The position numbers and the translations under genes were made by a program. Positions 6,102 through 64,000 of a DNA stretch of 64,000 bases are shown piece after piece (the first letter of the stretch is position 1; every line of letters begins with the position of its first letter). The stretch spans positions 186,001 through 250,000 of the IMG/VR virus record IMGVR_UViG_3300035698_029839, one strand, 5' to 3'. The notes under the pieces are model-generated. The model was given only the letters and a program-made list of their open reading frames with translations, was not told the origin of the DNA and made no database searches.

Positions 6102-6956
6102 ATGACAACTAATATATATTTACAAAGTGATTTTCAAGAATCTTATGATAAGTATCTTCATGATCCTATGGGTAAAATCAGATGGAAAAGACTTTCTCGC
6201 GGAGGAAGAAATAGAAGAGAGATATTTAAATTATTAGAAAATTATGTAGGTGCTGTGGGAGGAAGGATAGATCATGTGGTTCCTCATGGAATAGTAAGGG
6301 ATTTATATGATAGGTATCGAGATGAAAGGATAATAGATGGTAAGGTTGAACGGAATTATAGATGGAAAGAACTTGGACTTCAACATTGTTTTAGAGATTT
6401 GGTTATTTATATAGATGAAATGGCACATAGGGGAGAAGGGAAAATAGCAGAAAATGTAGAAGGGGCACTTATTGAATATCCCGATCATTATGCTTCTGTT
6501 TTACTATCTGATAATAGAAATATTTATCCAACTTCAATATCTTATAGAGATTTGTATATCGGAGATCAAATATTTAGATTAAAATATCAATCTCTTACTG
6601 ATGGATGGAGATCTAATTGTGGGTATGTTAATATAATTTATGAAAATAGATCTCATTTATATGAGAATCAATTTACTCCTGCTTTTACAAAAAAAGAAGG
6701 GATACATATAATATCTCCTATTTTTGCTTTTGATTATATCGAAGTGAATGTAGAAAGAAGTCAATATCCTGATGGTATTCCAGAAAGATTTTATGTAGAT
6801 TTTAATGAAGCTCCTGGAATACCTGAAGAAGTAGTAGTTTGTAAACTTGGTCATGAGAGATACGGAGAGTTAATTTCATTCTATGATCTTATTTCAGAAA
6901 AAGAAATTTCCGAAATAATAGAAAAAACTTTGAAAAGTGAAAAGATATTGTTATAA
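6102..6956 (+). CDS. divergent ATP-grasp (RimK-like) protein
   Basis: HRGEGK, WRSN, FAFDY and DFNEAPG in RimK-like order. Confidence 0.45.
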   Translation: MTTNIYLQSDFQESYDKYLHDPMGKIRWKRLSRGGRNRREIFKLLENYVGAVGGRIDHVVPHGIVRDLYDRYRDERIIDGKVERNYRWKELGLQHCFRDLVIYIDEMAHRGEGKIAENVEGALIEYPDHYASVLLSDNRNIYPTSISYRDLYIGDQIFRLKYQSLTDGWRSNCGYVNIIYENRSHLYENQFTPAFTKKEGIHIISPIFAFDYIEVNVERSQYPDGIPERFYVDFNEAPGIPEEVVVCKLGHERYGELISFYDLISEKEISEIIEKTLKSEKILL

Positions 6957-8563
6957 TGGGAATATGGTTAACAAAAAAACAATATACTAGGTATATTAAT
7001 TTTACTACGGATACAGGTAAGGAATTAGCAGATATGAATAATACCCCAGTTAAATCACCAGTGAGACACAATAATAATTTAAGTACGGCTATACAATCAG
7101 AAGTTGTAAGAAAAACAGAATTTTTGGATGATGAATATCCTTTCGGTGATTGTGAGGAGGCTCAGGTGGAAGGTGGAGCGGCTGAAACAATGAATTTAGA
7201 AGAAAAAAACAAGCAAATAGAAGAGAACTTAGCGAAAGTTAAATTTGCAGATCAAATTAAGATAGATTTTATACCCTCTATTGATTATAGAATATTGTGT
7301 AGATTTCTAGGTGTTACTACTGTAAATGACATAAAGAACCATCCCTTTCAGTCCCATCCACTTATTACTTTGATATTAATGGAGAGTCTTAATGGGTTTA
7401 TGGAACAAGAAGGATATGAAATGGTTGGAGAATTAAATTTTGACAATCATGGTAATTCTGTACCTCCTGATAAGAATCCATGGAACGTAAGGGGCAAAGA
7501 AACCACCTTTACTATAACTGGTTTTTTATTCTTTGAAAAAATAAAAGGAGAGAAGAAGGACAATGTCTCATTCTTTTTATTCTCAGATCTTGAAAGAGGT
7601 GGAGCTTCTATTACTTGTTATAGCACAGATACTAACAAATCTAAAGATATTGTTAATGATTTGCAAATATATTCCAAAAAGAACAATTGTTTAAGAGGAG
7701 CGAAACTTAAAGATGTAAACATGATTACTGCTTCTTTTTCTGAGGTAGATCTTAGAGCAGAAGATTCAAGACCAGAGTATACTTGGGACAATTATTACTA
7801 TTCTGATGAAATTAAAGATTTATTTCAATTAGAGGTTTTTGATTTTGTTGAAAATGTAAAAAAATATAACGAATGTAATATTTATAAAAGAGGGATCATT
7901 TTGCATGGTAGGCCAGGGTGTGGAAAAACCACAATCGGTAATATCCTCTGTAATATGACCCCTAACAATACGGTAATATGGATAACTCCTGAAATTTTAT
8001 CAGAGAACAATTATAAAGCTATGTCTTCGATAAAAGCTCTTTATAAATTAGCTGATTTTCTTTCGCCATGTATCATTATGCTTGAAGATTTAGATTTGTT
8101 TAGTCAGGACAGGGAAAGAGGTGGAGATGTTATTTCTCTTGGGGCGCTGATGAATATTCTTGATGGTGTTAATACTATTTCTAATTCTGTCACTATTGGC
8201 ACTACAAATAGATTGGGATCTATTGAAACAGCATTAAGAAATAGACCTGGCCGATTTGATAGAATAATAGAGATAGAATCTCTTTCAAAAGATCTTAGGA
8301 CCAAGATGTTTAAAGAAAGATTAAAAGAATGGAAAGTTTCTAAAAACACTTTAGATTATGTTGCTGATAAAACCGACGAATGGACAGGTGCAGAAGTACA
8401 AGAGTTTATTAATAGTCTTAATCTCAAACACATTAGTAGTAAAAGAAAAATCAAAAAGATGAGTCAGTCATGGGCAGAAGAGATTATAGGCACTTTGAGT
8501 AATTTCGGTGTCGGAGGATCTAGTTCTGGTTTCGGCTTCGGTGGAAAAATTAAAAATGATTGA
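6956..8563 (+). CDS. AAA+ ATPase
   Basis: Walker A GRPGCGKT, Walker B IIMLEDLD, sensor TTN, second region of homology ALRNRPGRFDR. Confidence 0.93.
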   Translation: MGIWLTKKQYTRYINFTTDTGKELADMNNTPVKSPVRHNNNLSTAIQSEVVRKTEFLDDEYPFGDCEEAQVEGGAAETMNLEEKNKQIEENLAKVKFADQIKIDFIPSIDYRILCRFLGVTTVNDIKNHPFQSHPLITLILMESLNGFMEQEGYEMVGELNFDNHGNSVPPDKNPWNVRGKETTFTITGFLFFEKIKGEKKDNVSFFLFSDLERGGASITCYSTDTNKSKDIVNDLQIYSKKNNCLRGAKLKDVNMITASFSEVDLRAEDSRPEYTWDNYYYSDEIKDLFQLEVFDFVENVKKYNECNIYKRGIILHGRPGCGKTTIGNILCNMTPNNTVIWITPEILSENNYKAMSSIKALYKLADFLSPCIIMLEDLDLFSQDRERGGDVISLGALMNILDGVNTISNSVTIGTTNRLGSIETALRNRPGRFDRIIEIESLSKDLRTKMFKERLKEWKVSKNTLDYVADKTDEWTGAEVQEFINSLNLKHISSKRKIKKMSQSWAEEIIGTLSNFGVGGSSSGFGFGGKIKND

Positions 8564-9012: not shown

Positions 9013-10740
9013 ATGGCTAAGTATGCAAATCATGTAGCAAATCCAAAGACTCCTCAAAATGAGAGAGCAAAGAGCACCCAAGTAAAAGGTAAGGCAGGTG
9101 GTTTTGTCTTTAAAGTTGATGACTGGACAAGACTTAATCGTTTCTTAATCATTGGTAGTGAAAATGGTTCTTACTACGCTTCAGAGCGTAAGTCAACTAT
9201 GGAAAACTATAATTGCATTTTGAGATGTTTGAAACTTGATGCCAAGAAAACTGTGGATACTATTGTAGAGATTAGTGATAAGGGTCGTGCGGTAAAGAAC
9301 GATCCTGCTATTTTTGCTCTGGCAGTATGTAGTGTTCACGGAGATGAAAAGACTAAGGCACATGCTAATAGTGTTATGCCTAAAGTTGCTCGTTTCTCTA
9401 CTGCTTTTTTTACGTGGATTGATGCGGTCAATACATTGAAGGAAGGTCGTAAGGGTAAGGGTCTGTTGAGGGCTATAGGAAGATGGTACACAGAGAAAGA
9501 CCCTGTAAGGCTAGCTTATCAAATTTGCAAATATCCAGGTCGTTCAGTAGGTGGTCAAAGATGGACTCATGCTGATGCTCTTCGTATGGCAAGAATTTCT
9601 CCATCTAGGGACGGCAAGCCTTCTAAAAATGGTAAGGCTTTAACTATTCCTACTGATGATCATGCAGTTGTATTCCATTATGCAACACATGGGATTACAA
9701 CTGCTAAAGTTTTGAAGGCAAGGCAGGCAGAGGAAAAAGTTACTGGCAAGAAACAAGAAGCTCCTGGTATCTCGGAAGAGCAGTATGAAGCTTTGAAAGA
9801 TAGTAAGCTTAAGTATATCTGGGCACATGAGCAATGTAAGATTGCTATGAAGAACAGTGAAGTAGTTTCTTTGATTAGTGATTACAATCTTACTAGAGAG
9901 TCTATTCCTCCTCAATTCAGAAATGAATTAGAGATACAGAAAGCATTATTGCCAGGTATGCCAATGACAGCATTGATTCGTAACTTGGGTAGTATGACCT
10001 CTTCGGGTCTTCTAAAACCTTTGAGTGATGAGACTTCAGCAGTAATTGATAAAATTACAAATGATGAAATTCTGAAGAGGAGTCGTATTCATCCTATGAC
10101 AATTATGCTAGCCCTTAAAACTTATAGTAGCGGTGCTGGTATGAGGACTACATGGAAACCAGTATCATCAATTAAAGATGCTATGGAAGATGCTTTTTAC
10201 AAAGCTTTTAACTATGTTGAGCCAACTGGAAAGAAATTTTTGTTTGGTGTTGATGTTAGTGGTTCTATGGGTTGGGGTGATACTGCTGTTATGAGTCCTC
10301 GTGAGGCAGCGGCAGTGGTGGCTATGACGTGTGCTAGAACAGAGAAGAACTATGATATAATGGGTTTTTCTCACACATTCTCTAAGCTTAATATCACTGC
10401 TAAGGATAGTTTAGATACTGTAATTAGAAGGACTTCTAATTTAAACTTTGGTGGAACTGATTGCGCACTTCCTATGATGTATGCAATTAAAAATGAATTG
10501 GATGTAGATGTATTTGTTGTCTTAACAGACAATGAAACTTGGTGTGGTGGTATTCATCCATTTGAAGCATTGAAACAGTATCGTAAGAAATTTAATAAAA
10601 ATGCAAAGCTTGCAGTGTTGGCTTTTGATAGTAATGAATTTACTATTGCTGATCCAAGTGATGCAGGTATGATGGATATCGCTGGTTTGGATTCTAACGT
10701 ACCTAAAGTGTTAGCAGAATTTGCAGCAGGTAGACTTTAA
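9013..10740 (+). CDS. rsr: Ro60/TROVE-domain RNA-binding protein (Rsr-like) with C-terminal vWA domain
   Basis: AGGFVF...RLNRFLIIGS...YY, MPMTALIRNLG, RIHP, MIDAS DVSGSM, GGTDCALPM, TDNETW, IADPSDAGMMDIAGLD. Confidence 0.95.
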   Translation: MAKYANHVANPKTPQNERAKSTQVKGKAGGFVFKVDDWTRLNRFLIIGSENGSYYASERKSTMENYNCILRCLKLDAKKTVDTIVEISDKGRAVKNDPAIFALAVCSVHGDEKTKAHANSVMPKVARFSTAFFTWIDAVNTLKEGRKGKGLLRAIGRWYTEKDPVRLAYQICKYPGRSVGGQRWTHADALRMARISPSRDGKPSKNGKALTIPTDDHAVVFHYATHGITTAKVLKARQAEEKVTGKKQEAPGISEEQYEALKDSKLKYIWAHEQCKIAMKNSEVVSLISDYNLTRESIPPQFRNELEIQKALLPGMPMTALIRNLGSMTSSGLLKPLSDETSAVIDKITNDEILKRSRIHPMTIMLALKTYSSGAGMRTTWKPVSSIKDAMEDAFYKAFNYVEPTGKKFLFGVDVSGSMGWGDTAVMSPREAAAVVAMTCARTEKNYDIMGFSHTFSKLNITAKDSLDTVIRRTSNLNFGGTDCALPMMYAIKNELDVDVFVVLTDNETWCGGIHPFEALKQYRKKFNKNAKLAVLAFDSNEFTIADPSDAGMMDIAGLDSNVPKVLAEFAAGRL

Positions 10741-11421: not shown

Positions 11422-11427
11422 TTTGAA

Positions 11428-12131: not shown

Positions 12132-13028
12132 ATGAAAAAATGGACACCAAAAGAAGATAGTTTTTTAGAAAATAATGTTGGATCTTTAACATATAAACAG
12201 ATGGCGGACAATCTAAAAAGAACAAGAATGTCTGTGATGAAGCATTGTCAATGGAGAGGATTATCTAACTCTATACTGAGTGAAAAAACTCGATTTAAGA
12301 AAATATATAAAGTTAATGATAATTTTTTTAGTAACTATAATATTTTATCTTGTTACTACGCTGGATTGATAGCTTCTGATGGAAGCATTCATAAAAAAAG
12401 TAATGCGATATCAATAACTCAAGCTAAAAGTAGATTATCTTGTTTAGAAAAATTTAAGAAAGATGCTGGTTATAATGGAGTTATATATGGCCCTACAAAA
12501 ACAATAGGACAAGATGCTTACGCTCTGGTTATTAGTAGTAAAAAATGGAAAAAAGATTTAAAAAATAATTTTATGATTACACCTAATAAATCTTTAACAC
12601 TTTTACCTCCTGATTTAACTGATAAAAAAATGATAATTAGTTTTATAAATGGTTTGATTGATGGGGATGGGTCTGTTGGAGCTTATAATTATAAGAATAA
12701 AAAAGATATCGTTCCTATAATTACTTTTTGCGGAACAAAAAGTATAGTCGAGTGGGTTGCTAATAATTTAAATAAATATTTTATAATTAAAAATAGGACA
12801 ATACGTTATAGGCAGATAATTTCTAACAATACTTATTTTTTAAGTTTCAGTGGATGTAGGGTTATAAAATTTTATCAGTATCTTGTAAAAAATGATATCC
12901 CCTTTATGCGTTGTAAATGGAGCAGAATGGTAGATAAGTTATTTGTAAAAGGGCTGGATTACTATTTAAAAAACAAAAGAAAGACTAATAAGAGGGATAA
13001 TAATGGAAGATTTTGTAAAATTAGTTAA
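12132..13028 (+). CDS. free-standing LAGLIDADG homing endonuclease with N-terminal HTH
   Basis: YYAGLIASDGS and FINGLIDGDGS motifs; WTPKED HTH-like N-terminus. Confidence 0.9.
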   Translation: MKKWTPKEDSFLENNVGSLTYKQMADNLKRTRMSVMKHCQWRGLSNSILSEKTRFKKIYKVNDNFFSNYNILSCYYAGLIASDGSIHKKSNAISITQAKSRLSCLEKFKKDAGYNGVIYGPTKTIGQDAYALVISSKKWKKDLKNNFMITPNKSLTLLPPDLTDKKMIISFINGLIDGDGSVGAYNYKNKKDIVPIITFCGTKSIVEWVANNLNKYFIIKNRTIRYRQIISNNTYFLSFSGCRVIKFYQYLVKNDIPFMRCKWSRMVDKLFVKGLDYYLKNKRKTNKRDNNGRFCKIS

Positions 13029-14211
13029 AGAATTAAGTATAGAACATCCTGCAAGAGTCATAGAATTCTCTGACTTAACTAAGGGATTGTTCGCAGAAGT
13101 GGCAAAGGGTAATATTAATGTAGGTTATCACCCAGAGTTTCCACATCTTGCTATATTTAAATACTCTCTAGGTTGTGTTATGGAAAGAAACTGGAATAAA
13201 TTTACTATTATGGCTAGAGGTCTAATATTAGACCTTAAAAATAAAAGTGTTATCGCTACTCCGTTCATAAAATTTTGGAATTATGATGAGATTTTTTCTG
13301 CTATATCTATTCTTGAGCCAGAGTTTACTATTACAGAGAAGATGGATGGCTCACTAGGTATAATGTTCTTCTATGCAGATAAGTTTAGATTTGCAACAGC
13401 AGGTTCATTTATATCTGAACAAGCTCAATGGGCAGAACAATGGATGTACAACAAGATGCCTTTGGATAAAATAGATAAGACTAATACTTATTTGTTTGAG
13501 ATAATTTATCCAGAGAATAAGATTGTGGTTACTTATGATTTTGAAGGACTAGTTTTGCTTGGTATCTTTGATACTTATGGTTTAGAATATAACTATGAGC
13601 AATTAAAGTGGGAAGCTTCATATATGGGAACATCTTGTACTCCACAACATGATTTCGCAGATATGGACAGCATACTTAATAATGCTAAGACTTTAGATAG
13701 CAACAATGAAGGATATGTAATACGGTTCAAGAACGGGATACGTTTGAAGATTAAGGGCGATGAATATGTTCGTATACATAGATTAATATCAAGAGTAACA
13801 CCTCTTGCTATCTGGGAATCTATCATAAACGGAGATGACTTAACAGAAGTAAAGGAAGAATTACCAGAAGAGATGGAAAAAGACTTTGATGCTATAACTG
13901 CAATTCTTTACGAGAAGTTAGAAATCTTTGTAAAAGAAGTAGAAGCTCTGCATTCTGAAACTAAGTTAATGTCGGATAAAGCATTGGGTCTTTATATACA
14001 AAGAAATCCCGAAGGTTGGGGAGATAGAACATTTAAAAGATCTTTGAGATATATTTTTCCTATGAGAAAAAATAAGTTCTATGAATCTCTTAAAGAAAAA
14101 GGATCGTTAGGTCGTAAGAAGATTTTTAATGAGTTTAGACCTACATCTAATAGATTAGAAGGTTATACACCATCATCAGCAGTTAATAGATTTGCCGATA
14201 TGGACACCTAA
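13003..14211 (+). CDS. RNA ligase, T4 Rnl1-like
   Basis: ARGLI, PFIKFWN, adenylation motif EKMDGS, FEII, EGYV, LKIKGDEY. Confidence 0.9.
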   Translation: MEDFVKLVKELSIEHPARVIEFSDLTKGLFAEVAKGNINVGYHPEFPHLAIFKYSLGCVMERNWNKFTIMARGLILDLKNKSVIATPFIKFWNYDEIFSAISILEPEFTITEKMDGSLGIMFFYADKFRFATAGSFISEQAQWAEQWMYNKMPLDKIDKTNTYLFEIIYPENKIVVTYDFEGLVLLGIFDTYGLEYNYEQLKWEASYMGTSCTPQHDFADMDSILNNAKTLDSNNEGYVIRFKNGIRLKIKGDEYVRIHRLISRVTPLAIWESIINGDDLTEVKEELPEEMEKDFDAITAILYEKLEIFVKEVEALHSETKLMSDKALGLYIQRNPEGWGDRTFKRSLRYIFPMRKNKFYESLKEKGSLGRKKIFNEFRPTSNRLEGYTPSSAVNRFADMDT

Positions 14212-14826
14212 ATCACTTTTCACTTTTCAAAAAAACAATTTGTAAGTGAAAGTGATTTAGGTTATAATTAAGGCAGTAATGTTAACTACTACTGAAGGCG
14301 TGCAAATGAAAAGTGAATATGGGTGTTATGTTTTAATGTTGTCGTATGTTGATGAGAACTGGATGGATATAGGCGGTAATATTTATCCACCAGAAGGTTT
14401 TGTAGAAGCTAAAAATTTTACAAGAGATATTGATGTCAGATTTGGATTGAATGGGATTTTATGGGGAAAAACTTGTTATTTTCCATATGAGCAAATTAAC
14501 AAAGGGAATTGGACGGTTGTAAAAACAGAATTGATTGACGATTTGATTAAAACAGAACATTATTATAATCGTTATAAATTTCCAAATGGATGGATAGTTT
14601 ATTCTGGTAGTTTAAGAGACTCTGCTAAATATATAGTAAGACATAAAAATGATGACAGTTTTTCCGAAGATGGAAAATGGATTCAAGCAGAAGAAATAGC
14701 TGGATCTCGTCAATGGATGAAAGATCATAATTTAGAGTAGGAATAAATGGTGCTAAAGCATTTTGTATTTTTTTATATTTTCTATTTAAATATTTTTAAT
14801 AAATAAAAATTATAGAAAGAAGGTGT

Positions 14827-15516
14827 ATTATATATTTTATTGGTGACGTTCATGAAGAATTCAAAACCTATGAATATATTGTTTTGAAAATGCAACACAA
14901 AGGAGGTAGAAAAGGTATGGAATTTTCTCTTCAAGTTGGAGATATGGGTATTGGATTTCCTGATTATGGAGATTATTCTAAAGATGGTAAAAGTTGGTCT
15001 CCTATAATGCCTTCTGATCATATGTTTTTTAATGGCAATCATGATAATCCTTTATTATGTAAAACTCATCCTAACTATTTAGGAGATTGGGGGTATATCC
15101 CTGATCCAAATATGTTTTATGTTTCTGGCGGTTTTTCTATAGATCATGCTTATAGATTTGTTGATATGACTTGGTGGAAAGATGAAGAATTGAATAATGA
15201 AGAAATGTCTAAAGCTTTAGATTCTTATAAAATTAATAAACCAAAAATAGTGGTATCTCATGAATGTCCATTAGGAGTTAAAATAGATTTTGTTACTAAT
15301 TCATGGAAGTTTGATGTCAACAGTAGAACAGAGGAATTACTACAAAGTATGTTTGAAATACATCAACCTGACTACTGGATTTTTGGACATCATCATCAAA
15401 GAAAAGAGTTGGATAAAAATGGAACTCATTTTGTGTGTTTAGATGAGTTGATAGGTGGTAAAATAAATGATTGTATTTATGAAATAAAAGGTTTAACTTG
15501 GGAAGGATATAAATAA
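14827..15516 (+). CDS. calcineurin-like metallophosphoesterase (probable non-AUG start)
   Basis: In-frame IYFIGDVH lies upstream of the called start; also QVGDMG, GNHDN, VSHECP, FGHHH. Confidence 0.85.
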   Translation: MIYFIGDVHEEFKTYEYIVLKMQHKGGRKGMEFSLQVGDMGIGFPDYGDYSKDGKSWSPIMPSDHMFFNGNHDNPLLCKTHPNYLGDWGYIPDPNMFYVSGGFSIDHAYRFVDMTWWKDEELNNEEMSKALDSYKINKPKIVVSHECPLGVKIDFVTNSWKFDVNSRTEELLQSMFEIHQPDYWIFGHHHQRKELDKNGTHFVCLDELIGGKINDCIYEIKGLTWEGYK

Positions 15517-15827
15517 TGCCGTATATACTACAAGAACAAAGAGATAGATTAGATCCTATGATAGAACATCTTTCAAAAGATTTGTTAGAGCATCTTGATG
15601 TAGGAGAGTATAATTATGTAATGACTAAGCTTATGCATGAATTTATATTGAAGAAGGGTATAAAATATAAAAACTTCAGTGCCGCTAAAGCAGTGTTGAT
15701 GGATGCTAGAGATGAACTTAGTAGAATTCCAATGGGATTTTATGAAGATGAAAAAATAAGAGCCAATGGTTTTATTAGTGAATTAGATTTACACTCGCGT
15801 AGGAGCAAGGGAGATTCGACAATATGA
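15516..15827 (+). CDS. conserved phage protein (DUF6899-like)
   Basis: MPYI...GEYNY...YEDEKIRANG pattern. Confidence 0.55.
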   Translation: MPYILQEQRDRLDPMIEHLSKDLLEHLDVGEYNYVMTKLMHEFILKKGIKYKNFSAAKAVLMDARDELSRIPMGFYEDEKIRANGFISELDLHSRRSKGDSTI

Positions 15828-16606
15828 TTGGAGCTATAATAGGCGATGTAGTAGGTTCTCCTTATGAAGGGAGAAGAATGAATTTCTTCGATTATGATTT
15901 TCCTCTCTTCAACGAAAGATCTACGTTTACAGATGATACTATTTTAACTGTTGCTACTGCCAAGGCCATACTTGAGGATATTCCTTATGGAACAGCGTAT
16001 CTTGAGCTAGGTAGAAAATATAGACGTAAGGGTTATGGTAGTGCTTTTGAAGAGTGGTTATGTTCTCCTGACCCTCAACCGTATGGTAGCTGGGGCAATG
16101 GCTCGGCTATGAGAATTAGCCCTATCGGTCTTTATTTTGATACTCCATCAAAGGTTGGTATAGAGGCTGCGAAGAGTTCTAAAATAACTCATAATCATCT
16201 TGATGCTATACAGGGTGCATCAGCTATTGCCTTAGCTATTCATTATGCTAAATGTGAGGGCAATAAGGAACAGATTAAAGATATTGTAAAAGCTATGTAT
16301 AATTATGAGTTTGAAAAGGATTGGGAATTTTATAGAAATAATTATAAATTTGATATTACCTGTAAGGGCACTGTTATTCAGGCATTAACCGTTTTCTTTG
16401 AATCAAATAGTTTTGAAGATTGCATAAGGAAATCTGTGTTAATGGGAGGAGATACAGATACATTAGCTTGTATAGCGGGTTCTGTAGCGGAAGCATATTA
16501 TAAAGATATACCTGAAGATATAGCAACAGAAGCTTTAGGCAAAATTCCTGATGAGTTTTTAACTATTGTAAGAGAATTTTACAAAACGATGAGAACAAGT
16601 ATATGA
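15824..16606 (+). CDS. ADP-ribosylglycohydrolase (DraG/ARH family)
   Basis: GAIIGDVVGS, FTDDT, SWGNGSAMR, ITHNH, GGDTDT. Confidence 0.93.
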   Translation: MIGAIIGDVVGSPYEGRRMNFFDYDFPLFNERSTFTDDTILTVATAKAILEDIPYGTAYLELGRKYRRKGYGSAFEEWLCSPDPQPYGSWGNGSAMRISPIGLYFDTPSKVGIEAAKSSKITHNHLDAIQGASAIALAIHYAKCEGNKEQIKDIVKAMYNYEFEKDWEFYRNNYKFDITCKGTVIQALTVFFESNSFEDCIRKSVLMGGDTDTLACIAGSVAEAYYKDIPEDIATEALGKIPDEFLTIVREFYKTMRTSI

Positions 16607-17262
16607 TTAAGATAGCAGCAATATCTGATATGCATGGTCAACTATCTTTCAAAGTCCCAGAAGTAGATTTGCTTTTGATAGCGGGAGATTTGTGCCCCGC
16701 TCGTCATGAACCATATCTTTGTGTTGATTTTCAATCTAATTGGTTAAATCTCGATTTTAGATATTGGTTATCAGATCAACCGATTAAAGAGTGTGTAGCA
16801 GTAGCAGGAAATCATGATTGGATATGGGAAAAAGCTAAAGATCAAGTTCCTAAAATGAATGCTAATTTCCATTATATAGAAGATGAATCAATAGAGATTC
16901 TTGGTCAAAAAATATATGGAACTCCAGTACAGTTACCTTTTAATAATTGGGCTTTTAATAAAGATGAAAAATCGATTCAAAAACATTGGGACAATATCCC
17001 TGAAGGCCTAGATATACTTCTTCTTCATAGTCCTCCGTATGGATTTTTAGATAGAACTAATCCTCTTAATTATGAATCAGAAAGAATTGGGAGTAAAAGT
17101 CTTACAAAGAGAATAGAAGAAGTTTGTCCAAAACTTGTTGTATTTGGTCACAATCATGAATCTCATGGCACTTTTGAAGAAAATGGGATCACTTACATCA
17201 ATGCTTCTCTAGTTGATGAGAGATATAAAATGACAAGAGAACCTATTGTGGTGGAATTATGA
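16603..17262 (+). CDS. calcineurin-like metallophosphoesterase
   Basis: ISDMHG, IAGD, AGNHD, HSPP, FGHNHE. Confidence 0.92.
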   Translation: MIKIAAISDMHGQLSFKVPEVDLLLIAGDLCPARHEPYLCVDFQSNWLNLDFRYWLSDQPIKECVAVAGNHDWIWEKAKDQVPKMNANFHYIEDESIEILGQKIYGTPVQLPFNNWAFNKDEKSIQKHWDNIPEGLDILLLHSPPYGFLDRTNPLNYESERIGSKSLTKRIEEVCPKLVVFGHNHESHGTFEENGITYINASLVDERYKMTREPIVVEL

Positions 17263-60008: not shown

Positions 60009-60081
60009 TGTCCTTTAGTGTAATGGCTTAGCACGATTGCCTTTGACGCAATCAGTCGAAGTTCGAATCTTCGGAGGACAG
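60009..60081 (+). tRNA. tRNA-Gln(UUG)
   Basis: Cloverleaf; anticodon loop CT-TTG-AC; T loop TTCGAAT. Confidence 0.9.
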
Positions 60082-60178
60082 CTATGAATAGGATAATGTA
60101 TAAAAATAAAAAAAGGAGTATTCCCCTATTATCAGAATATATATAATATAAAGTACATTTTAATAATAGGAGATTGTA

Positions 60179-60892
60179 ATGAAACAAAAAACAGGGCCTA
60201 AAAGGACTAGTATTATATGGCAGATGTCAAAAAAAGATTTTACAGAAAATGTGAAAAAAAGTTCTACTTTTAAAGAGATATTAAAATATTTTGGATTAGA
60301 AAATAAAGGTAGCAATTACAAAACATTAAAAAAAAGATTAGAGGAAGAAAATATAAATTATTCTCATATTCCTACAGGAGTAGGATGTAACAAAGGAATG
60401 AAAATAAATAGAAAAGCTATCTCATTAGAAAAAGTAATGATAGAAAATTCTACTTATTGCAGGGGGACTCTTAAAAAAAGATTATTAAAGAATGGTATGT
60501 TAGAAAATAAATGTATGATCTGTGATCAACTACCTGAACATAATGGGATTAAATTAGTAATGGTTTTAGATCATATTAATGGAACTCCTAATGATCATAG
60601 ATTAGAAAATTTAAGATTACTTTGTCCTAATTGCAATAGCCAACAATCAACTTTTGCTGGAAAAAGGCATAAAAAACATTATTATTGTGAAAAATGTGGG
60701 AATAAAAGAAAAAATAAACAAAGTAAATATTGTTTTAGTTGTTCTGTTAAATTAAATGGGCAAAATAGAAGAAAAGTTAAAAATAGACCATCTAAAGAAA
60801 AATTATTAAAAGAAATAAAAGAAACTAATTATTGTGCTGTTGGTAGAAAATATGATGTAAGTGATAGTGCTATTAGAAAATGGTTGAAATGA
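60179..60892 (+). CDS. HNH endonuclease in tRNA array (paralog 1)
   Basis: CMIC...LDHING..NDHRLENLRLLCPNCNSQ; C-terminal HTH. Confidence 0.9.
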   Translation: MKQKTGPKRTSIIWQMSKKDFTENVKKSSTFKEILKYFGLENKGSNYKTLKKRLEEENINYSHIPTGVGCNKGMKINRKAISLEKVMIENSTYCRGTLKKRLLKNGMLENKCMICDQLPEHNGIKLVMVLDHINGTPNDHRLENLRLLCPNCNSQQSTFAGKRHKKHYYCEKCGNKRKNKQSKYCFSCSVKLNGQNRRKVKNRPSKEKLLKEIKETNYCAVGRKYDVSDSAIRKWLK

Positions 60893-60895
60893 TAT

Positions 60896-60969
60896 TCCCA
60901 TGTAACTCAATTAGGCAGAGTGGCACGCTGTTAACGTGTTGGTTGTAGGTTCGATTCCTACCGTGGGAG
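60896..60969 (+). tRNA. tRNA-Asn(GUU)
   Basis: Cloverleaf; loop CT-GTT-AA. Confidence 0.9.
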
Positions 60970-61081
60970 TTCGATTCTTTGAAAAGTAAATAGGGGTTCC
61001 AAAAGGAACACACATTGTGTTAAGTTTTAATTACTAACACATGGAGAGGTATAGCACTGAGTGGTATCTCTCCATGTTTTC

Positions 61082-61155
61082 TGACCTATAGCTTATGTGG
61101 GAAAAGCATTCGTCTTATAAGCGAAAGAGTCCAGGTTCGAATCCTGGTGGGTCAA
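61082..61155 (+). tRNA. tRNA-Ile(UAU)
   Basis: Cloverleaf; loop CT-TAT-AA; A73. Confidence 0.88.
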
Positions 61156-61158
61156 TAT

Positions 61159-61231
61159 AGGCATAAAGCTCAGCAGGCAGAGCATCGTGCTGATATCACG
61201 AAGGCCGTTGGTTCGAATCCAGCTATGCCTA
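61159..61231 (+). tRNA. tRNA-Ile(GAU)
   Basis: Cloverleaf; loop CT-GAT-AT. Confidence 0.9.
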
Positions 61232-61299
61232 TTAGAAAGAGGAATTCTTCTTTTTTTCCCGAAATAATATAGAATAAAGGACAAAAGGGAGAATTCATC

Positions 61300-61518
61300 A
61301 TGAAAGAAGTCTTGATAGAATTAGTAAAAAGGGTAAGTAGGAAAGCAGTTATATTAGCAATAGCTATGGTGTTGGTATATATGGTTATTATAACACCGAA
61401 TGCCGTAAATGCAGTGATAGCTATAGGGGTGATTTCTGGTTTATCAATAGTAGGAGCAGGACTTCAATTTTATTTAGATCTTAAAAAGATCAAAGATGAC
61501 GAAACAGATAAAATTTAA
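61300..61518 (+). CDS. small two-helix membrane protein (holin-like)
   Basis: SRK followed by two hydrophobic segments and a charged tail. Confidence 0.5.
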   Translation: MKEVLIELVKRVSRKAVILAIAMVLVYMVIITPNAVNAVIAIGVISGLSIVGAGLQFYLDLKKIKDDETDKI

Positions 61519-61659
61519 GCAGGTTGAATGTGAGTAAGTTATCGCTTATGGAGCCTGATGTGGATGGTTCGATTCCTCCTCTCTCGATTACAAATTGTTC
61601 GAGAGATAGCTTAACGGTAGAGCGCAGTAAAAACACTTATTCCTCCCACATATCTGCTT
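61517..61659 (+). ncRNA. YrlA-like Y RNA with permuted tRNA-like domain (Y1)
   Basis: Terminal stem AAGCAGGT/ATCTGCTT; T arm GGATGGTTCGATTCCTCC, then closed acceptor-like stem TCTCTCGA/TCGAGAGA, then D arm AGCTTAACGGTAGAGC; Ro60 gene in the same window. Confidence 0.8.
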
Positions 61660-61669
61660 TTTTAAACTT

Positions 61670-61763
61670 AGAAATATGGTGATAGGGCCTACAAAGCTTG
61701 GGTCAGCCAACTACCCTAGGGACGCAAGTCATTGGTCTGGGGTCGAGTCCCAGTCATATTTCT
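61670..61763 (+). ncRNA. aberrant tRNA-like RNA without a canonical anticodon loop
   Basis: Acceptor-like AGAAATATGG/TCATATTTCT, T arm CTGGG-GTCGAGT-CCCAG, enlarged branched anticodon arm. Confidence 0.5.
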
Positions 61764-61770
61764 CTTTTTT

Positions 61771-61844
61771 ACCCGCTTCGCTTAGTTGGCTAAAGCATCT
61801 GTCCTACAAACAGAAGATCGTAGGTTCGAGTCCTATCGCGGGTA
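61771..61844 (+). tRNA. tRNA-Val(UAC)
   Basis: Cloverleaf; loop CC-TAC-AA (C33). Confidence 0.85.
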
Positions 61845-61846
61845 TT

Positions 61847-61970
61847 ACACAGGTTGATCGCATGAAGGTTATCGGATAAAACATTTTTTCTTCAAACAAA
61901 AAATGCAAGTAGGGTTCAAACCCTTACAACCCAGAAATGGGAAAATTCTTCTGCACTAACATATCTGTGT
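61847..61970 (+). ncRNA. Y-RNA-like ncRNA (Y2)
   Basis: ACACAGGTTGA...GGTTATCG at 5' end and ACATATCTGTGT at 3' end; internal hairpin plus T-arm-like GTAGGG-TTCAAAC-CCTTAC. Confidence 0.7.
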
Positions 61971-61973
61971 TTT

Positions 61974-62044
61974 CCCCTATTGGTGTAATGGGAGCACGTG
62001 GCACTGTCGATGCCAGGGCAGCAGATCGAAACTGCTATGGGGGG
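61974..62044 (+). tRNA. tRNA-Asp(GUC)
   Basis: Cloverleaf; loop CT-GTC-GA; G73; T loop ATCGAAA. Confidence 0.85.
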
Positions 62045-62049
62045 TTTTT

Positions 62050-62131
62050 GAGAGTATTGAGCAATTGGTGGCTTATCTGGCTGTAACCCAGATTCTGAAA
62101 AGACTTGTAGGTTCGAATCCTTCTGCTCTCA
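62050..62131 (+). tRNA. tRNA-Tyr(GUA)
   Basis: Cloverleaf with long variable arm; loop CT-GTA-AC. Confidence 0.9.
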
Positions 62132-62134
62132 TTT

Positions 62135-62251
62135 GGAGTTACTATGAATAAGAATTCTAGAAACTTATTTTAGTACTTTAGTCGTCTAAGGGCAAGGATA
62201 CCTGTGCAAGCAGGAGATATGGTGTTCGAGTCGTCATCTAAATATTACTCC
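62135..62251 (+). ncRNA. degenerate tRNA-like element in a larger closing stem
   Basis: GGAGT/ACTCC closure; D-arm-like GTCTAAGGGCAAGGAT, short CCTG-TGCAAG-CAGG arm, TTCGAGT T loop. Confidence 0.45.
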
Positions 62252-62256
62252 TAAAT

Positions 62257-62347
62257 GGTAAGTTGGCAGAGTCTGGCTTATTGCACTTGGTTGCTAACCA
62301 AGAGGGCCTTGAATAAGGTCCCATAGGTTCAAATCCTATACTTACCG
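62257..62347 (+). tRNA. tRNA-Ser(GCU)
   Basis: Cloverleaf with long variable arm; loop TT-GCT-AA; G73. Confidence 0.92.
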
Positions 62348-62429
62348 TTAGTGTGGAAAGCCGCACACGTAGTTACTTCCTTTTCGAAGGAGCAGACTAG
62401 GCTTGACGAAGGGGAAGAGACTCCTAACT

Positions 62430-62516
62430 GGATGAGCAAGCAGATTGGTGACTGCACTGGTTTTGAAAACCAACGAGCCTTTAAAAGCCTTGAGAGTTCG
62501 ATTCCCTCCTCATCCG
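62430..62516 (+). tRNA. tRNA-Ser(UGA)
   Basis: Long variable arm; loop TT-TGA-AA; G73. Confidence 0.88.
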
Positions 62517-62522
62517 CTTATT

Positions 62523-62595
62523 AGCGATATGGTGAAAATGGTAATCATAGATCCTTCATAAGGATCAGTTCCTGGTTCGATTCCAGATATCGCTA
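62523..62595 (+). tRNA. tRNA-Met or Ile2 (CAU)
   Basis: Cloverleaf; loop TT-CAT-AA; no initiator GGG/CCC stem. Confidence 0.85.
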
Positions 62596-62603
62596 TTTAT
62601 CAA

Positions 62604-62679
62604 CTGAACGTGGGGAAGTTTGGCCTAACCCGCCTGGTCTGGAGCCAGGAGAACGCTGGTTCAAATCCAGCCGTTCAGA
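62604..62679 (+). tRNA. tRNA-Pro(UGG)
   Basis: C1-G72, A73; stem CCTGG/CCAGG; loop TC-TGG-AG (C33, A37). Confidence 0.82.
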
Positions 62680-62787
62680 TTTTGTAACACCGAATAGAAA
62701 ATAAGCAGTCAAGACATATGTTTTATTAAAGGAATCCTGTCTTTTATGTCGAATATATAGATATAAGTTATTTAGATAGGAGATAAA

Positions 62788-63477
62788 ATGAGAAAAAGAA
62801 CAAGTGTTGTGTGGAAGATATCAATAGAAGAATTAAAAAAGATAGTAAAAAAGAATGATAGTTTTGCAAAAATTTTAAAACATTTTGGGATGGCAATAGC
62901 AAGTGGAAACTATAAAACATTAAAAAAAAGATTAAATTATGAAAATATAAGTTATTCTCATATATCTCAAGGGCTTAATAATAATAAAGGAAGAAAATTT
63001 CCAGAAAGAGCTATTCCCTTAAAAGAAGTAATGGTAAAAAACTCTACCTATTGTAGGGGAACTCTTAAAAAAAGATTATTAAAAAAGGGTTTATTAGAAA
63101 ATAAATGTAATATTTGTGGACAAATTTCTGAACATAATAATATTAAGTTAATAATGGTTTTAGATCATATAAATGGAGTTTCTAATGATCATCGCGTAGA
63201 GAATTTAAGATTGCTTTGTCCTAATTGTAATAGCCAACAAAAAACATTTGCGGGAAGAAATTCTGTAAGAAAAAAATATAACTGTATTACTTGTGGTAAA
63301 AAAATTACAAAACATTCAAAATTGTGTAAAAGTTGCAGTGCTAGATTGCAAAAAAGAAAAGTTAAAAATAGACCTTCAGTAGAACAATTATTAAAAGAAA
63401 TAAAAGAAACTAATTATTGTGTTGTTGGTAGGAAATATGAAGTAAGTGATAATGCAGTAAGAAAATGGTTAAAATAA
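62788..63477 (+). CDS. HNH endonuclease in tRNA array (paralog 2)
   Basis: Close paralog of 60179-60892 (NSTYCRGTLKKRLLK, LENLRLLCPNCNSQQ-like, LLKEIKETNYC). Confidence 0.9.
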   Translation: MRKRTSVVWKISIEELKKIVKKNDSFAKILKHFGMAIASGNYKTLKKRLNYENISYSHISQGLNNNKGRKFPERAIPLKEVMVKNSTYCRGTLKKRLLKKGLLENKCNICGQISEHNNIKLIMVLDHINGVSNDHRVENLRLLCPNCNSQQKTFAGRNSVRKKYNCITCGKKITKHSKLCKSCSARLQKRKVKNRPSVEQLLKEIKETNYCVVGRKYEVSDNAVRKWLK

Positions 63478-63479
63478 AA

Positions 63480-63551
63480 GGCCCATTCTTCTAGTGGCTA
63501 GGATATCAGGGTTTCATCCTGAAAACAGCGGTCCGACTCCGCTATGGGCTA
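63480..63551 (+). tRNA. tRNA-Glu(UUC)
   Basis: Cloverleaf; loop GT-TTC-AT; T loop TCCGACT. Confidence 0.85.
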
Positions 63552-63559
63552 TTTAATCA

Positions 63560-63597
63560 AGGCAGAAACTGAGGGTTCGAGTCCCTTCCAGAGTATT
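63560..63597 (+). pseudogene. orphan tRNA 3' half
   Basis: GAGGG-TTCGAGT-CCCTT T arm with no matching 5' half. Confidence 0.5.
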
Positions 63598-63600
63598 CCT

Positions 63601-63672
63601 GCTCTTCTGGTGTAACGGTTAGCATCCGTGATTCTCAGTCACGAGATAGGGGTCCGACTCCCCTGAAGAGTA
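63601..63672 (+). tRNA. tRNA-Glu(CUC)
   Basis: Cloverleaf; loop TT-CTC-AG; T loop TCCGACT. Confidence 0.85.
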
Positions 63673-63825
63673 TTTTTCCTCTTATAAGTCCTTGTCTTTT
63701 ATGGATTTAAAAAAATATTAAAAAAATTGGAAAAAAGTTATTGAAAAGTGAAAGAAAATCCGATATAGTAATATCATCATAACGAAAGTTATGACTTCTT
63801 TTACAAGTTAATAGAGAGAAAAAAG

Positions 63826-63896
63826 AAACGGGTTGAAGTCTAAAAGTTATCGATCCTTGAAAATCAAACACACTTTTTGACACACCATATCCGTTT
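63826..63896 (+). ncRNA. minimal Y-RNA-like ncRNA (Y3)
   Basis: AAACGGGTTGA...AAGTTATCG at 5' end and CATATCCGTTT at 3' end; inner stem GTC-AAAAGT/ACTTTT-GAC. Confidence 0.7.
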
Positions 63897-63910
63897 TTTC
63901 TAAAATATGC

Positions 63911-64000
63911 ATGTGGGTTGATTGATATTGGTTATCGATAATTACTGTGAAAAAGTGCAAGTAAGGATCAAAAAAGAGATTTAGGTAAAGTTAGATTGAG
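63911..64000 (+). ncRNA. Y-RNA-like ncRNA (Y4), truncated by the window end
   Basis: GGGTTGA...GGTTATCG; shares TGCAAGTA(A/G)GG with Y2. Confidence 0.55.

What the first reader, a model, noticed from the sequence alone, without database searches (positions are those of the whole stretch)
61517..64000. Four Y-RNA-like ncRNAs with a constant Ro60-type stem and different tRNA-like cargo, interleaved with tRNAs
Seen: elements at 61517, 61847, 63826 and 63911 share 5' GGTTGA-N8to10-GTTATCG, and the three complete ones end CATATC(T/C)G. Their terminal stems differ in sequence yet still pair (GCAGGT/ATCTGC, ACACAGGT/ATCTGTGT, AAACGGGT/ATCCGTTT), which is compensatory change. Cargo differs: Y1 has T arm, closed acceptor stem and D arm; Y2 has a hairpin with loop CTTCAAAC plus a T arm; Y3 only a small GAT-CCTTGAAA-ATC hairpin; Y4 an ACT-GTGAAAA-AGT hairpin. 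Established: the T-before-D permuted order is the YrlA Y RNA architecture, and Y RNAs bind Ro60, encoded at 9013-10740. Inference: one Ro60 scaffold loaded with interchangeable tRNA-fragment mimics, perhaps decoys for anticodon nucleases or adaptors for repair enzymes. The anticodon reading of the small loops is ambiguous. The Y RNAs lie about 50 kb from Ro60, within the tRNA array rather than beside the gene.
Basis: partly seen in the sequence, partly recalled or inferred. Interest (0 to 1): 0.82.

Follow-up and report, generated by a model that had tools for sequence, protein, structure and literature searches.

The report
Phage Y RNA family inside tRNA array
A giant salt-lake phage that encodes the RNA-binding ring protein Ro60 also carries six small "Y RNA" partner genes with one constant Ro60-type stem and different inner modules, tucked between its tRNA genes about 51 kb from the Ro60 gene.

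Summary
The motif GGTTGA-N9-10-GTTATCG occurs 4 times, all on the + strand (0.01 expected). Each complete copy ends CAYATC plus the complement of its 5' flank. The genome has six such genes: Y4 is a 255-nt RNA running past base 64000, and Y5 and Y6 lie just beyond. Related metagenomic phages yield 124 distinct copies, all in tRNA arrays. Both stems covary.

A covariance model built only from the minimal phage copies finds 46 matches in 80 bacterial Ro60 (rsr) loci. All are on the rsr strand and 45 lie within 1.5 kb of the gene. 800 kb of unrelated viral DNA gives 3 chance-level hits. Several of the bacterial RNAs tested pass Rfam's threshold for nematode stem-bulge RNAs, which are Y RNA homologues. 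The phage RNAs share their layout: a bulged lower helix, an upper stem, and UUAUC opening the loop.

Y1 and Y5 carry the permuted tRNA-like domain of YrlA. Y5 scores 37 bits, like a known mycobacteriophage YrlA.

These are Y RNAs of a diverged helix type. Ro60 binding and expression are untested. The anticodon-decoy idea has no support; a role as an RNA-repair adaptor is plausible.

The parts
61517..61659 (+). Y1 (type A). Y RNA with terminal stem, GGUUGA/CAUAUC helix, upper stem, GUUAUCG, then a V hairpin, T arm (bulged U), closed acceptor-like stem-loop and D arm. A U-run follows.
   Evidence: Motif and 3' end. Partial Rfam YrlA match at 61555-61629, 20.4 bits, which is weak. Orthologues L019 9138-9272 and L128 696-825 are found end to end by model R1.
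61847..61970 (+). Y2 (type B). Y RNA whose cargo is an A-U hairpin, a T-arm-like hairpin and a small hairpin. It lies 2-3 nt from tRNA-Val upstream and tRNA-Asp downstream.
   Evidence: R1 match 37.7 bits, E=5.6e-5, over the whole model. Fold z-score -3.2. tRNA coordinates.
63823..63899 (+). Y3 (type C). Minimal Y RNA: only the lower helix, upper stem, GUUAUCG and a short unconserved loop. A U-run follows.
   Evidence: Alignment A2 of 24 such elements with consensus structure. R1 72.1 bits. It aligns collinearly with bacterial rsr-adjacent RNAs.
63912..64000 (+). Y4 (type D), 5' part only. The full RNA is about 255 nt and ends near 64166. It carries a roughly 200-nt structured cargo of unknown kind.
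   Evidence: L136 507-761. In alignment A4 of 13 orthologues, 19 of 39 pairs show compensatory change. No Rfam family.
9013..10740 (+). Ro60 (TROVE + vWA) gene, the presumed protein partner.
   Evidence: Pfam. PDB 1YVP E=3.5e-114.
13003..14211 (+). Rnl1-type (T4 RNA ligase 1 family) RNA ligase, a conserved neighbour of Ro60.
   Evidence: Pfam RNA_lig_T4_1 E=5.3e-15. The same neighbourhood occurs in relatives.
14884..17262 (+). Two calcineurin-like phosphoesterase genes (14884-15516, 16603-17262) flanking an ADP-ribosylglycohydrolase gene (15824-16606). Part of the conserved Ro60 cluster.
   Evidence: Pfam. Synteny in relatives.
6956..8563 (+). AAA ATPase gene just upstream of Ro60, a conserved neighbour.
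   Evidence: Pfam AAA E=4.7e-20. The same order occurs in L287, L291 and the P0062 contig.
61770..61845 (+). tRNA-Val. Its 3' end lies 2 nt before Y2.
   Evidence: ARAGORN and Rfam.
61973..62045 (+). tRNA-Asp. Its 5' end lies 2-3 nt after Y2, so RNase P cleavage would set the 3' end of Y2.
   Evidence: ARAGORN and Rfam. The processing step is an inference.
63741..63769 (+). Promoter-like site (TTGAAA-17-TATAGT) about 55 nt upstream of Y3.
   Evidence: Consensus scan, 10 of 12. The number of such sites in the region is not above shuffles, so this is weak.

Best explanation
The four elements, plus two more just past the window's end, are genes for Y RNAs, the small non-coding partners of Ro60. 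They belong to a diverged lineage found so far in a clade of huge phages from salt-lake and similar metagenomes.

Shown:
- Each RNA closes its 5' and 3' ends into a stem.
- The core of that stem is an invariant helix, 5' R-GGUUGA paired with 3' CAYAUC-Y and carrying one unpaired pyrimidine.
- Above it comes a covarying upper stem, whose last pair uses the G of GUUAUCG. UUAUC then opens the loop.
- The same three-part layout occurs in the small RNAs that flank bacterial rsr genes (shown here) and in metazoan Y RNAs and nematode sbRNAs (from the literature).
- The loop holds one of at least six module types: none, the permuted tRNA-like V-T-AS-D domain of YrlA, a T arm plus hairpins, or a 200-nt structured domain.

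Inferred:
- The phage Ro60 (9013-10740) binds the constant helix, mainly its invariant 5' strand.
- The RNAs are transcribed with the tRNA array and released by tRNA-processing enzymes: RNase P at the next tRNA's 5' end and a tRNA 3'-end nuclease upstream.
- The variable modules tether Ro60 to different partners.

The most likely setting is RNA repair or quality control during infection. Ro60 lies in a conserved cluster with an Rnl1-type RNA ligase and phosphoesterases. Recruitment of host PNPase is the main alternative.
For: Motif statistics: 4 matches against 0.01 expected.

Family size: 163 motif sites in related loci, of which 146 have the CAYATC end with paired flanks, giving 124 distinct copies.

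Structure:
- The RNAalifold consensus has 9 of 17 pairs with double-sided change.
- On 111 distinct sequences, 92.9% of cells are paired, against 82.3% when shuffled and 32-60% when slid. There are 219 double-sided changes against 64 expected; 0 of 500 shuffles reach this.
- Upper-stem duplex energy is -5.6 kcal/mol with an element's own 3' strand and -3.2 with another element's, p=1e-33.

Link to Ro60:
- Model R1, built only from minimal phage copies, gives 46 hits in 41 of 80 bacterial or MAG rsr loci. All are on the rsr strand, 34 lie within 300 nt and 45 within 1.5 kb of the gene.
- 801 kb of unrelated viral loci that carry the primary motif by chance give 3 hits at E=5-8.
- The bacterial hits read GGGCCGAAG...GGGUUAUC...CUUGUCC, which fits Chen's GNCGAAN0-1G motif (PMC4201824).
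- In the 11 bacterial loci scanned, seven of these RNAs, in six loci, pass the Rfam threshold of RF01656, nematode sbRNAs. sbRNAs are Y RNA homologues with a bulged lower stem, an upper stem and UUAUC at the loop's 5' end (PMC4450293, PMC4726728).
- Cross-lineage covariation in the helix: GGGCCGA/CUUGUCC, GGGUCGA/CUUAUCC, and phage GGGUUGA/CAYAUCC.
- Two other marine phage-like contigs have four and three Y-like RNAs with different cargo directly upstream of Ro60.
- All three IMG/VR contigs that carry these RNAs also encode the closely related Ro60.

YrlA likeness: Y5 aligns to all of RF02553 at 37.2 bits, E=4e-7 on its own stretch of 161 bases. A known-type mycobacteriophage YrlA scores 36.1.

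Processing: all 568 tRNAs in the loci are on the same strand as the elements. 37 of 113 elements have a tRNA ending within 10 nt upstream, and 46 of 108 have a tRNA starting within 10 nt downstream.

Repair context.
Against: - There is no direct evidence of transcription. No RNA run was listed.
- There is no evidence of Ro60 binding. The complex predictor gave no usable result for protein-RNA.
- The literal Ro-binding motif is changed: UU stands where bacteria and animals have CC, and the 3' strand differs. No phage element reaches Rfam's Y_RNA, sbRNA or YrlA thresholds.
- The genes are 51 kb from Ro60, unlike nearly all described bacterial and phage Y RNAs, which lie within 4 kb.
- Co-occurrence with Ro60 could be checked on only three large contigs. 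The metagenome fragments with arrays are too short to contain Ro60.
- The function of the modules is entirely inferred.
Confidence: 0.72

Rival explanations
1. The RNAs are Y RNAs that bind the phage Ro60, but their job is to capture host polynucleotide phosphorylase in a RYPER-like machine. This would degrade structured host RNA or divert PNPase from host defence, rather than serve RNA repair.
For: D. radiodurans Yrn1 tethers Rsr to PNPase, and Thermus phage phiLo Ro60 with its two Yrl RNAs binds host PNPase in vitro (PMC12135203; bioRxiv 10.1101/312249). The identity evidence is the same as for the best explanation.
Against: Nothing in the cargo was tested for PNPase binding. Six module types are more than one partner needs. 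The conserved neighbours of Ro60 are a ligase and phosphoesterases, not nucleases.
Confidence: 0.2
2. One reading: the modules imitate tRNA pieces and soak up host tRNA-cleaving defence nucleases, with or without Ro60.
For: The elements sit in a tRNA array, which in phages is often linked to countering tRNA depletion. About 70 of the 124 copies carry a tRNA-like T arm, acceptor-like stem-loop and D arm, by my reading of the lists (the script's own T+D class holds 25).
Against: The tRNA-like types have no anticodon arm, because the Y stem occupies that place (YrlA structure, bioRxiv 10.1101/312249). The small loops proposed as anticodon mimics are not conserved in length or sequence. The strict conservation of the Ro-type helix would be unexplained.
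Confidence: 0.06
3. The elements are not functional RNAs of their own. They would be processing spacers, decayed tRNA genes or a small repeat that spread within tRNA arrays.
For: They lie between tRNAs and some contain tRNA arms. Single-sequence folds are not much better than shuffles for Y1, Y3 and Y4.
Against: Compensatory changes occur in two helices across 111 sequences. Six paralogue types are kept in order in genomes whose Ro60 proteins are only 73-84% identical. There is sequence-plus-structure similarity to rsr-adjacent RNAs in bacteria. The arms of Y1 and Y5 are no closer to neighbouring tRNAs than generic arms are.
Confidence: 0.02

Closest known systems
Bacterial YrlA and YrlB (Salmonella Typhimurium, Mycobacterium smegmatis; Chen et al. 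2014, PMC4201824; Rfam RF02553)
   Same: Ends pair into a stem holding the Ro-binding motif. A YUAY/UUAUC element follows the upper stem. Y1 and Y5 carry the permuted V-T-AS-D tRNA-like domain with GG in the D loop and UUCGA in the T loop. A genome holds more than one Y RNA, including small ones without a tRNA domain.
   Different: The helix reads RGGUUGA/CAYAUCY instead of GNCGAA(N)G/CUUGUCC. There are six genes rather than two. They lie 51 kb from Ro60 inside a tRNA array rather than within 4 kb. They score below the Rfam threshold (37 bits against 69). There are extra cargo types, including a 200-nt domain.
Small RNAs flanking rsr in uncultured bacteria and MAGs (found here, L207-L286)
   Same: They align collinearly over the whole length of the minimal phage type and are found by the phage-derived model.
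   Different: They keep the canonical CC (or UC) in the 5' strand and CUUGUCC in the 3' strand. They sit next to rsr, and they pass Rfam RF01656.
Thermus phage phiLo Yrl1/Yrl2 with phiRo60 (PMC12135203), and the mycobacteriophage, CcrColossus and phage G YrlA-like RNAs (PMC4201824)
   Same: A phage encodes both Ro60 and its Y RNAs, with several Y RNAs per phage.
   Different: Those RNAs lie just upstream of Ro60 and keep the CGAA motif. There are two rather than six, they are not in a tRNA array, and no comparable range of cargo is described.
Vertebrate Y RNAs and nematode stem-bulge RNAs (PMC4726728, PMC4450293; Rfam RF00019, RF01656)
   Same: Lower stem with a single unpaired pyrimidine, an upper stem, UUAUC at the 5' end of a variable loop, and often a 3' U-run.
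   Different: No phage element matches those Rfam models at E<=10. The eukaryotic RNAs are Pol III transcripts, and a role in DNA replication is not implied here.
Deinococcus radiodurans Yrn1 / RYPER
   Same: A modular Y RNA that tethers Ro60 to an effector. This is a possible working model.
   Different: The module layout differs, and PNPase binding is untested here.

Membership tests
Y RNA (Ro60-associated ncRNA, general) | The 5' and 3' ends pair into a long stem split into lower and upper parts | tested here: met
   Consensus structure and covariation. Upper-stem own-partner test.
Y RNA (Ro60-associated ncRNA, general) | Conserved Ro60-binding helix with one unpaired pyrimidine, homologous to that of known Y RNAs | tested here: met
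   The phage-derived model R1 finds rsr-flanking RNAs: 46 hits, all on the rsr strand, 45 within 1.5 kb. The control search is clean. The alignment is collinear, with C-G to U-A covariation.
Y RNA (Ro60-associated ncRNA, general) | Literal 5'-strand motif GGUCCGA (animals) or GNCGAAN0-1G (bacteria) | tested here: not met
   All copies read GGUUGA(A/U), with U in place of the C.
Y RNA (Ro60-associated ncRNA, general) | UUAUC (YUAY) directly after the upper stem | tested here: met
   GUUAUC is invariant in alignment A2 and kept in the bacterial relatives. The literature describes the motif (PMC4450293, PMC4201824).
Y RNA (Ro60-associated ncRNA, general) | The genome encodes a Ro60 orthologue | tested here: met
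   ORF 9013-10740. All three IMG/VR contigs that carry the RNAs also encode Ro60.
Y RNA (Ro60-associated ncRNA, general) | Physical binding to, and stabilisation by, Ro60 | not testable with these tools
   The complex predictor returned no usable result for protein-RNA.
Y RNA (Ro60-associated ncRNA, general) | Expressed as a discrete small RNA | not testable with these tools
   No RNA run was listed. Only salt-lake DNA runs hold the sequence.
Bacterial/phage YrlA (Rfam RF02553) | Score at or above the Rfam gathering threshold (69 bits) | tested here: not met
   Y5 37.2 bits (full model), the L019 type F copy 34.0, Y1 20.4 (partial). For calibration, the mycobacteriophage LinStu YrlA scores 36.1.
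Bacterial/phage YrlA (Rfam RF02553) | Permuted tRNA-like domain: V loop, T arm, closed acceptor-like stem-loop, D arm | tested here: met
   Met for Y1, Y5 and their orthologues. Not met for Y2, Y3, Y4 and Y6.
Bacterial/phage YrlA (Rfam RF02553) | Encoded within about 4 kb of Ro60 on the same strand | tested here: not met
   Same strand, but 51 kb away. R1 finds nothing in the 10 kb either side of Ro60 in the four related contigs.
Bacterial/phage YrlA (Rfam RF02553) | tRNA-type modifications and RNase P / CCA-adding substrate behaviour | not testable with these tools
   Needs biochemistry.
Vertebrate Y RNA / nematode sbRNA (Rfam RF00019, RF01656) | Match to the family model | tested here: not met
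   No phage element matches at E<=10 or E<=5. In the 11 bacterial loci scanned, seven relatives in six loci pass RF01656.

The most novel reading that the evidence does not exclude
One phage Ro60 ring is programmed by a set of six interchangeable Y RNA adaptors that are made in step with the phage's tRNAs. Each inner module (tRNA-like elbow, T-arm hairpins, 200-nt domain, or none) would direct Ro60 and the co-encoded Rnl1 ligase and phosphoesterases, or host PNPase, to a different class of damaged or host RNA. The whole would form a phage counter-defence against RNA-cleaving immunity. The shared bulged helix plus UUAUC in phage, bacterial and animal RNAs would then mark a single ancient Ro60-Y RNA particle that also moves horizontally.
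Probability: 0.25. Interest if true: 0.85.

Novelty: new variant of a known kind. Interest (0 to 1): 0.64.

Why it matters
Y RNAs are known in animals, some bacteria and a few phages, but what their variable modules do is still open, above all the tRNA-like domain of YrlA. This phage clade offers a natural series: one constant Ro60-type helix carrying at least six different modules, in 124 sequence variants, next to an obvious set of candidate partners (Rnl1 ligase, phosphoesterases, AAA ATPase). That makes the question of which module recruits what directly testable.

It also shows three practical points:
- Y RNA genes can sit far from Ro60, inside tRNA arrays, where the usual search beside the rsr gene misses them.
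- Rfam's models miss this helix variant.
- Small RNAs next to bacterial rsr genes share the UUAUC and bulged-helix layout of animal Y RNAs closely enough to pass a nematode family threshold. This bears on whether bacterial and animal Y RNAs are homologous.

Tried and rejected
It gives no evidence either way.
- Searches for sequencing runs found only salt-lake DNA runs and listed no RNA run.
- Rfam at gathering thresholds finds only tRNAs in the window.
- MAFFT on the four raw elements gave a poor alignment. Anchoring on the motifs was needed.
- R1 with filters off mis-aligns copies with long inserts and misses Y2, so that run is uninformative. With default filters R1 also misses the window's own Y1, though it finds Y1's orthologues.
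- I tested whether the T and D arms of Y1, Y5 and Y6 were recently copied from neighbouring tRNAs. Best identities are 13-15 of 19 and 11-12 of 17, which is generic, so there is no sign of recent derivation.
- The array-bearing metagenome fragments contain neither Ro60 nor the ligase, so co-occurrence cannot be judged from them.
- BLASTN of the region against 50,697 GenBank phages gave only tRNA-level and homing-endonuclease matches.
- A literature check of my recollection that Ro60 K170/R174 are needed for Y RNA binding found nothing in the held library. The aligned residues K173 and R177 are invariant in 16 homologues, but I do not use this as evidence.
- Promoter and terminator scans are not enriched over shuffles.
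- The anticodon-mimic reading of the small loops is rejected, because the loops are not conserved.

Full report
**What is in the sequence.** The window is part of a 297.7-kb IMG/VR viral contig. Public DNA runs that hold this stretch are salt-lake metagenomes. Positions 60009-63673 hold 13 tRNA genes, all on the + strand.

The motif GGTTGA-N(7-12)-GTTATCG occurs four times, at 61522, 61852, 63831 and 63916, all on the + strand. Shuffles give a mean of 0.01 and none reaches four. The three copies that are complete in the window end in CATATC followed by the complement of the bases before GGTTGA. The ends therefore close into a stem.

The Ro60 ORF at 9013-10740 is real. It matches Pfam TROVE and vWA_Ro60 and the Xenopus Ro60 structure at E=3.5e-114.

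DNA just past the window's end (L136; L136 position + 63405 = window position) shows three things.
- Y4 is a 255-nt RNA, 63912 to about 64166.
- Y5 lies at about 65251-65377.
- Y6 lies at about 65565-65673.

Two related huge-phage contigs of 350 kb and 548 kb have Ro60 proteins 84% and 73% identical. The 350-kb one carries the same six types in the same order within its tRNA array. The stretch held from the 548-kb one shows at least two of them.

A metagenome scan with a type-specific pattern returned 48 loci. Across all these loci there are 163 motif sites. Of these, 146 have the CAYATC end with at least 3 paired flanking bases, giving 124 distinct sequences.

Module types:
- Minimal, 65-78 nt (Y3).
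- V hairpin, T arm, closed acceptor-like stem-loop and D arm, 117-147 nt (Y1, Y5). By my reading of the listed sequences this is the majority, about 70 of 124.
- T arm directly after GUUAUCG, plus two hairpins (Y6).
- An A-U hairpin plus a T-arm-like hairpin (Y2).
- A hairpin plus a T-like arm, about 90-100 nt (not present in this genome).
- A 230-290-nt type with a structured cargo (Y4).

**Structure.** An alignment of 24 minimal copies gives a consensus of a lower stem and an upper stem with a short internal loop between them. In 9 of its 17 pairs both sides change while the pair is kept.

A covariance model built from that alignment (R1) finds the other module types end to end. It treats their cargo as an insertion. 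On the resulting 111 distinct sequences:
- 92.9% of cells form pairs, against 82.3% after shuffling and 32-60% when partners are slid.
- There are 219 double-sided changes against 64 expected.
- 0 of 500 shuffles reach the observed covariation.

That alignment is fitted to the model, so I also ran an independent test. The 5' strand of the upper stem pairs better with its own 3' strand than with another element's: -5.6 against -3.2 kcal/mol, p=1e-33.

The helix core (GGUUG with CAYAUC) does not vary. That pattern is expected for a protein-contacted surface, although the search patterns favour it.

**Are they Y RNAs?** Four lines of evidence say yes.

(i) R1 was built from phage sequences only. 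I ran it on 80 bacterial or MAG loci centred on rsr genes (39-45% protein identity). It gives 46 hits in 41 loci. All are on the rsr strand, 34 lie within 300 nt and 45 within 1.5 kb of the gene. As a control I used 801 kb from 100 unrelated viral contigs that contain the primary motif by chance. That gives three hits at E=5-8.

(ii) The bacterial hits read xxCGGGCCGAAG-N6-GGGUUAUC-loop-CUUGUCCGxx. This fits the GNCGAAN0-1G Ro-binding motif and the following YUAY of Chen et al. (PMC4201824). They align collinearly with the phage minimal type over their whole length.

The helix covaries across lineages:

| Lineage | 5' strand | 3' strand |
|---|---|---|
| Bacteria | GGGCCGA | CUUGUCC |
| Bacteria | GGGUCGA | CUUAUCC |
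| Window clade | RGGUUGA | CAYAUCY |
| Marine contig L288 | GGACUGA | CUUGUCC |
| Marine contig L290 | GGGCUGA | CGCGUCC |

. Either register leaves one unpaired pyrimidine: the second U of the 5' strand, as in animal Y RNAs, or the Y of the 3' strand. I cannot tell which is right.

(iii) In the 11 bacterial loci I scanned, seven of these RNAs, in six loci, pass the Rfam gathering score of RF01656. That family is the nematode stem-bulge RNAs CeN72/CeN74. The literature treats them as homologues of vertebrate Y RNAs, with a bulged lower stem, an upper stem and a conserved UUAUC at the 5' end of the loop (PMC4450293, PMC4726728). In the phage RNAs, UUAUC sits at exactly that place.

(iv) Y5 aligns with the whole Rfam YrlA model at 37.2 bits, E=4e-7 on its own stretch of 161 bases. 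The alignment includes the T arm, acceptor-like stem and D arm. This is below the curated 69 bits. However, a Bxz1-type mycobacteriophage, the kind in which Chen et al. reported YrlA, scores only 36.1. The match of the window's Y1 is weak at 20.4 bits, no better than a chance junction of two tandem tRNAs at 19.9 bits. Y1's orthologues do better.

**Link to Ro60 in phages.**
- In IMG/VR, the type-specific patterns occur only in three contigs, and each of these also encodes the related Ro60.
- R1 finds no Y RNA within 10 kb of Ro60 in this clade, and none next to Ro60 in relatives of 50% and 67% identity.
- Two more distant marine phage-like contigs keep several Y-like RNAs of different cargo directly upstream of Ro60. 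L288 has four, interleaved with a tRNA. L290 has three, one of them with a long cargo.

A set of Y RNAs with one helix and varied cargo is therefore a recurring feature of Ro60-encoding phages. Placing the set in the tRNA array 51 kb away is particular to this clade.

**How they are probably made (inference).**
- All 568 tRNAs in the loci lie on the same strand as the elements.
- A tRNA ends within 10 nt upstream of 37 of 113 elements. A tRNA starts within 10 nt downstream of 46 of 108.
- Y2 is separated from tRNA-Val and tRNA-Asp by 2-3 nt.
- 53 of 124 elements are followed by a U-run.

Co-transcription with the array, and release by RNase P and tRNA 3'-end processing, is the simplest reading. 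The two best promoter-like sites in the region lie upstream of Y3 (63741-63769) and end 7 nt before Y4's stem (63877-63906). Such sites are not enriched over shuffles, so this is weak.

**What they probably do (inference).** Ro60 lies in a gene order that is conserved in relatives down to 46% identity: AAA ATPase, Ro60, a small ankyrin-repeat protein, Rnl1-type RNA ligase, ADP-ribosylglycohydrolase, metallophosphoesterase. From general knowledge, Rnl1 with an end-healing phosphoesterase is the phage T4 solution to anticodon-nuclease damage. In bacteria, rsr and its Y RNAs often sit with the RtcB ligase (bioRxiv 10.1101/312249).

I therefore favour Ro60-Y RNA particles as adaptors in RNA repair or quality control during infection, with the modules choosing partners. 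Capture of host PNPase, as proposed for Thermus phage phiLo (PMC12135203), is the main alternative.

The decoy idea is weak. The tRNA-like types lack an anticodon arm, and the small loops are not conserved.

**Limits.** There is no transcript evidence and no binding evidence. Co-occurrence with Ro60 rests on three contigs. The cargo classes come from simple pattern matching plus my own reading of the lists. E-values from R1 are rough.

**Verdict.** The Y RNA identity is well supported. This is a new variant of a known kind: a diverged helix, six paralogues, a location inside the tRNA array, and new cargo types.

Noticed in passing
L220 5770-5836 and 5857-5925; L260 5836-5904; L215 1094-1163; L241 5863-5932; L207 422-490; L209 5835-5903: Small RNAs directly upstream of rsr in uncultured bacteria pass the Rfam gathering score of the nematode stem-bulge RNA family RF01656. 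They share the GGGCCGAAG...GGGUUAUC...CUUGUCC layout. A review states that bacterial Y RNAs are not homologous with vertebrate ones (PMC4726728), so this similarity may deserve its own study.
   Followed up: partly
L241, L257, L258, L260, L209, L251 (around position 6001 of each): In several Verrucomicrobia and Chloroflexi MAG contigs the rsr gene sits inside arrays of about 10-25 same-strand tRNA genes. These may be prophages, mis-binned phages or tRNA islands.
   Followed up: no
L288 8999-9505; L290 9556-9985: Two marine phage-like contigs have four and three tandem Y-like RNAs with different cargo directly upstream of Ro60. Each has its own helix variant (GGACUGA, GGGCUGA). In L288 one is separated from the next by a tRNA-Ile.
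   Followed up: partly
window 6956-17262: Conserved gene order: AAA ATPase, Ro60, ankyrin-repeat protein, (LAGLIDADG insert), Rnl1 RNA ligase, phosphoesterase, ADP-ribosylglycohydrolase, phosphoesterase. The order is kept in relatives down to 46% Ro60 identity. From general knowledge, an AAA ATPase next to a vWA-domain protein recalls the MoxR-vWA pairing.
   Followed up: partly
window 63912-64000 and on to about 64166 (L136 507-761): The roughly 200-nt cargo of the long Y RNA has covarying helices and conserved single-stranded motifs (AACGCC, GGGAAGACU, AAAUUUCCC, UCCAAU). It matches no Rfam family.
   Followed up: partly
window 62349-62429: An unannotated element between tRNA-Ser(GCU) and tRNA-Ser(UGA) that folds far better than shuffles (z=-3.64, 0 of 200).
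   Followed up: no
window 61666-61767; L136 768-1430; L136 2084-2158: Further tRNA-like pieces that ARAGORN does not call. One lies between Y1 and tRNA-Val and has a clean T arm; it is absent from the 350-kb relative. Several odd units have GUAGGUGUGACUCCUAC arms. One is a cloverleaf with anticodon UGC, probably a second tRNA-Ala.
   Followed up: partly
window 60179-60892 and 62788-63477; L136 2347-2755: Paralogous HNH/zinc-ribbon ORFs, resembling homing endonucleases, are inserted within the tRNA array. Their C-terminal ends are nearly identical in sequence.
   Followed up: no
window 63877-63906: The best sigma-70-like match in the region (TTGACA-18-TAAAAT, 11 of 12) has its -35 box inside the 3' strand of Y3 and ends 7 nt before the stem of Y4. 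This would make Y4's 5' end a transcription start. It is not clearly conserved in L019.
   Followed up: no
window 61301-61519: A small ORF with a hydrophobic core ends with its stop codon inside the first bases of Y1's terminal stem. The same junction (TTTAAGCAGGTTGA) is kept in L019.
   Followed up: no
L288 2311-2551 (-) and 8672-8890 (+): Two HEARO RNAs above the Rfam threshold, one of them just upstream of the Y RNA cluster.
   Followed up: no
window 305-1300, 4415-5380, 22537-26528, 37281-38579: Other annotated genes: two DNA N6/N4 methylases, a queuosine-salvage protein, a ResIII-type helicase and a DndB-like protein.
   Followed up: no
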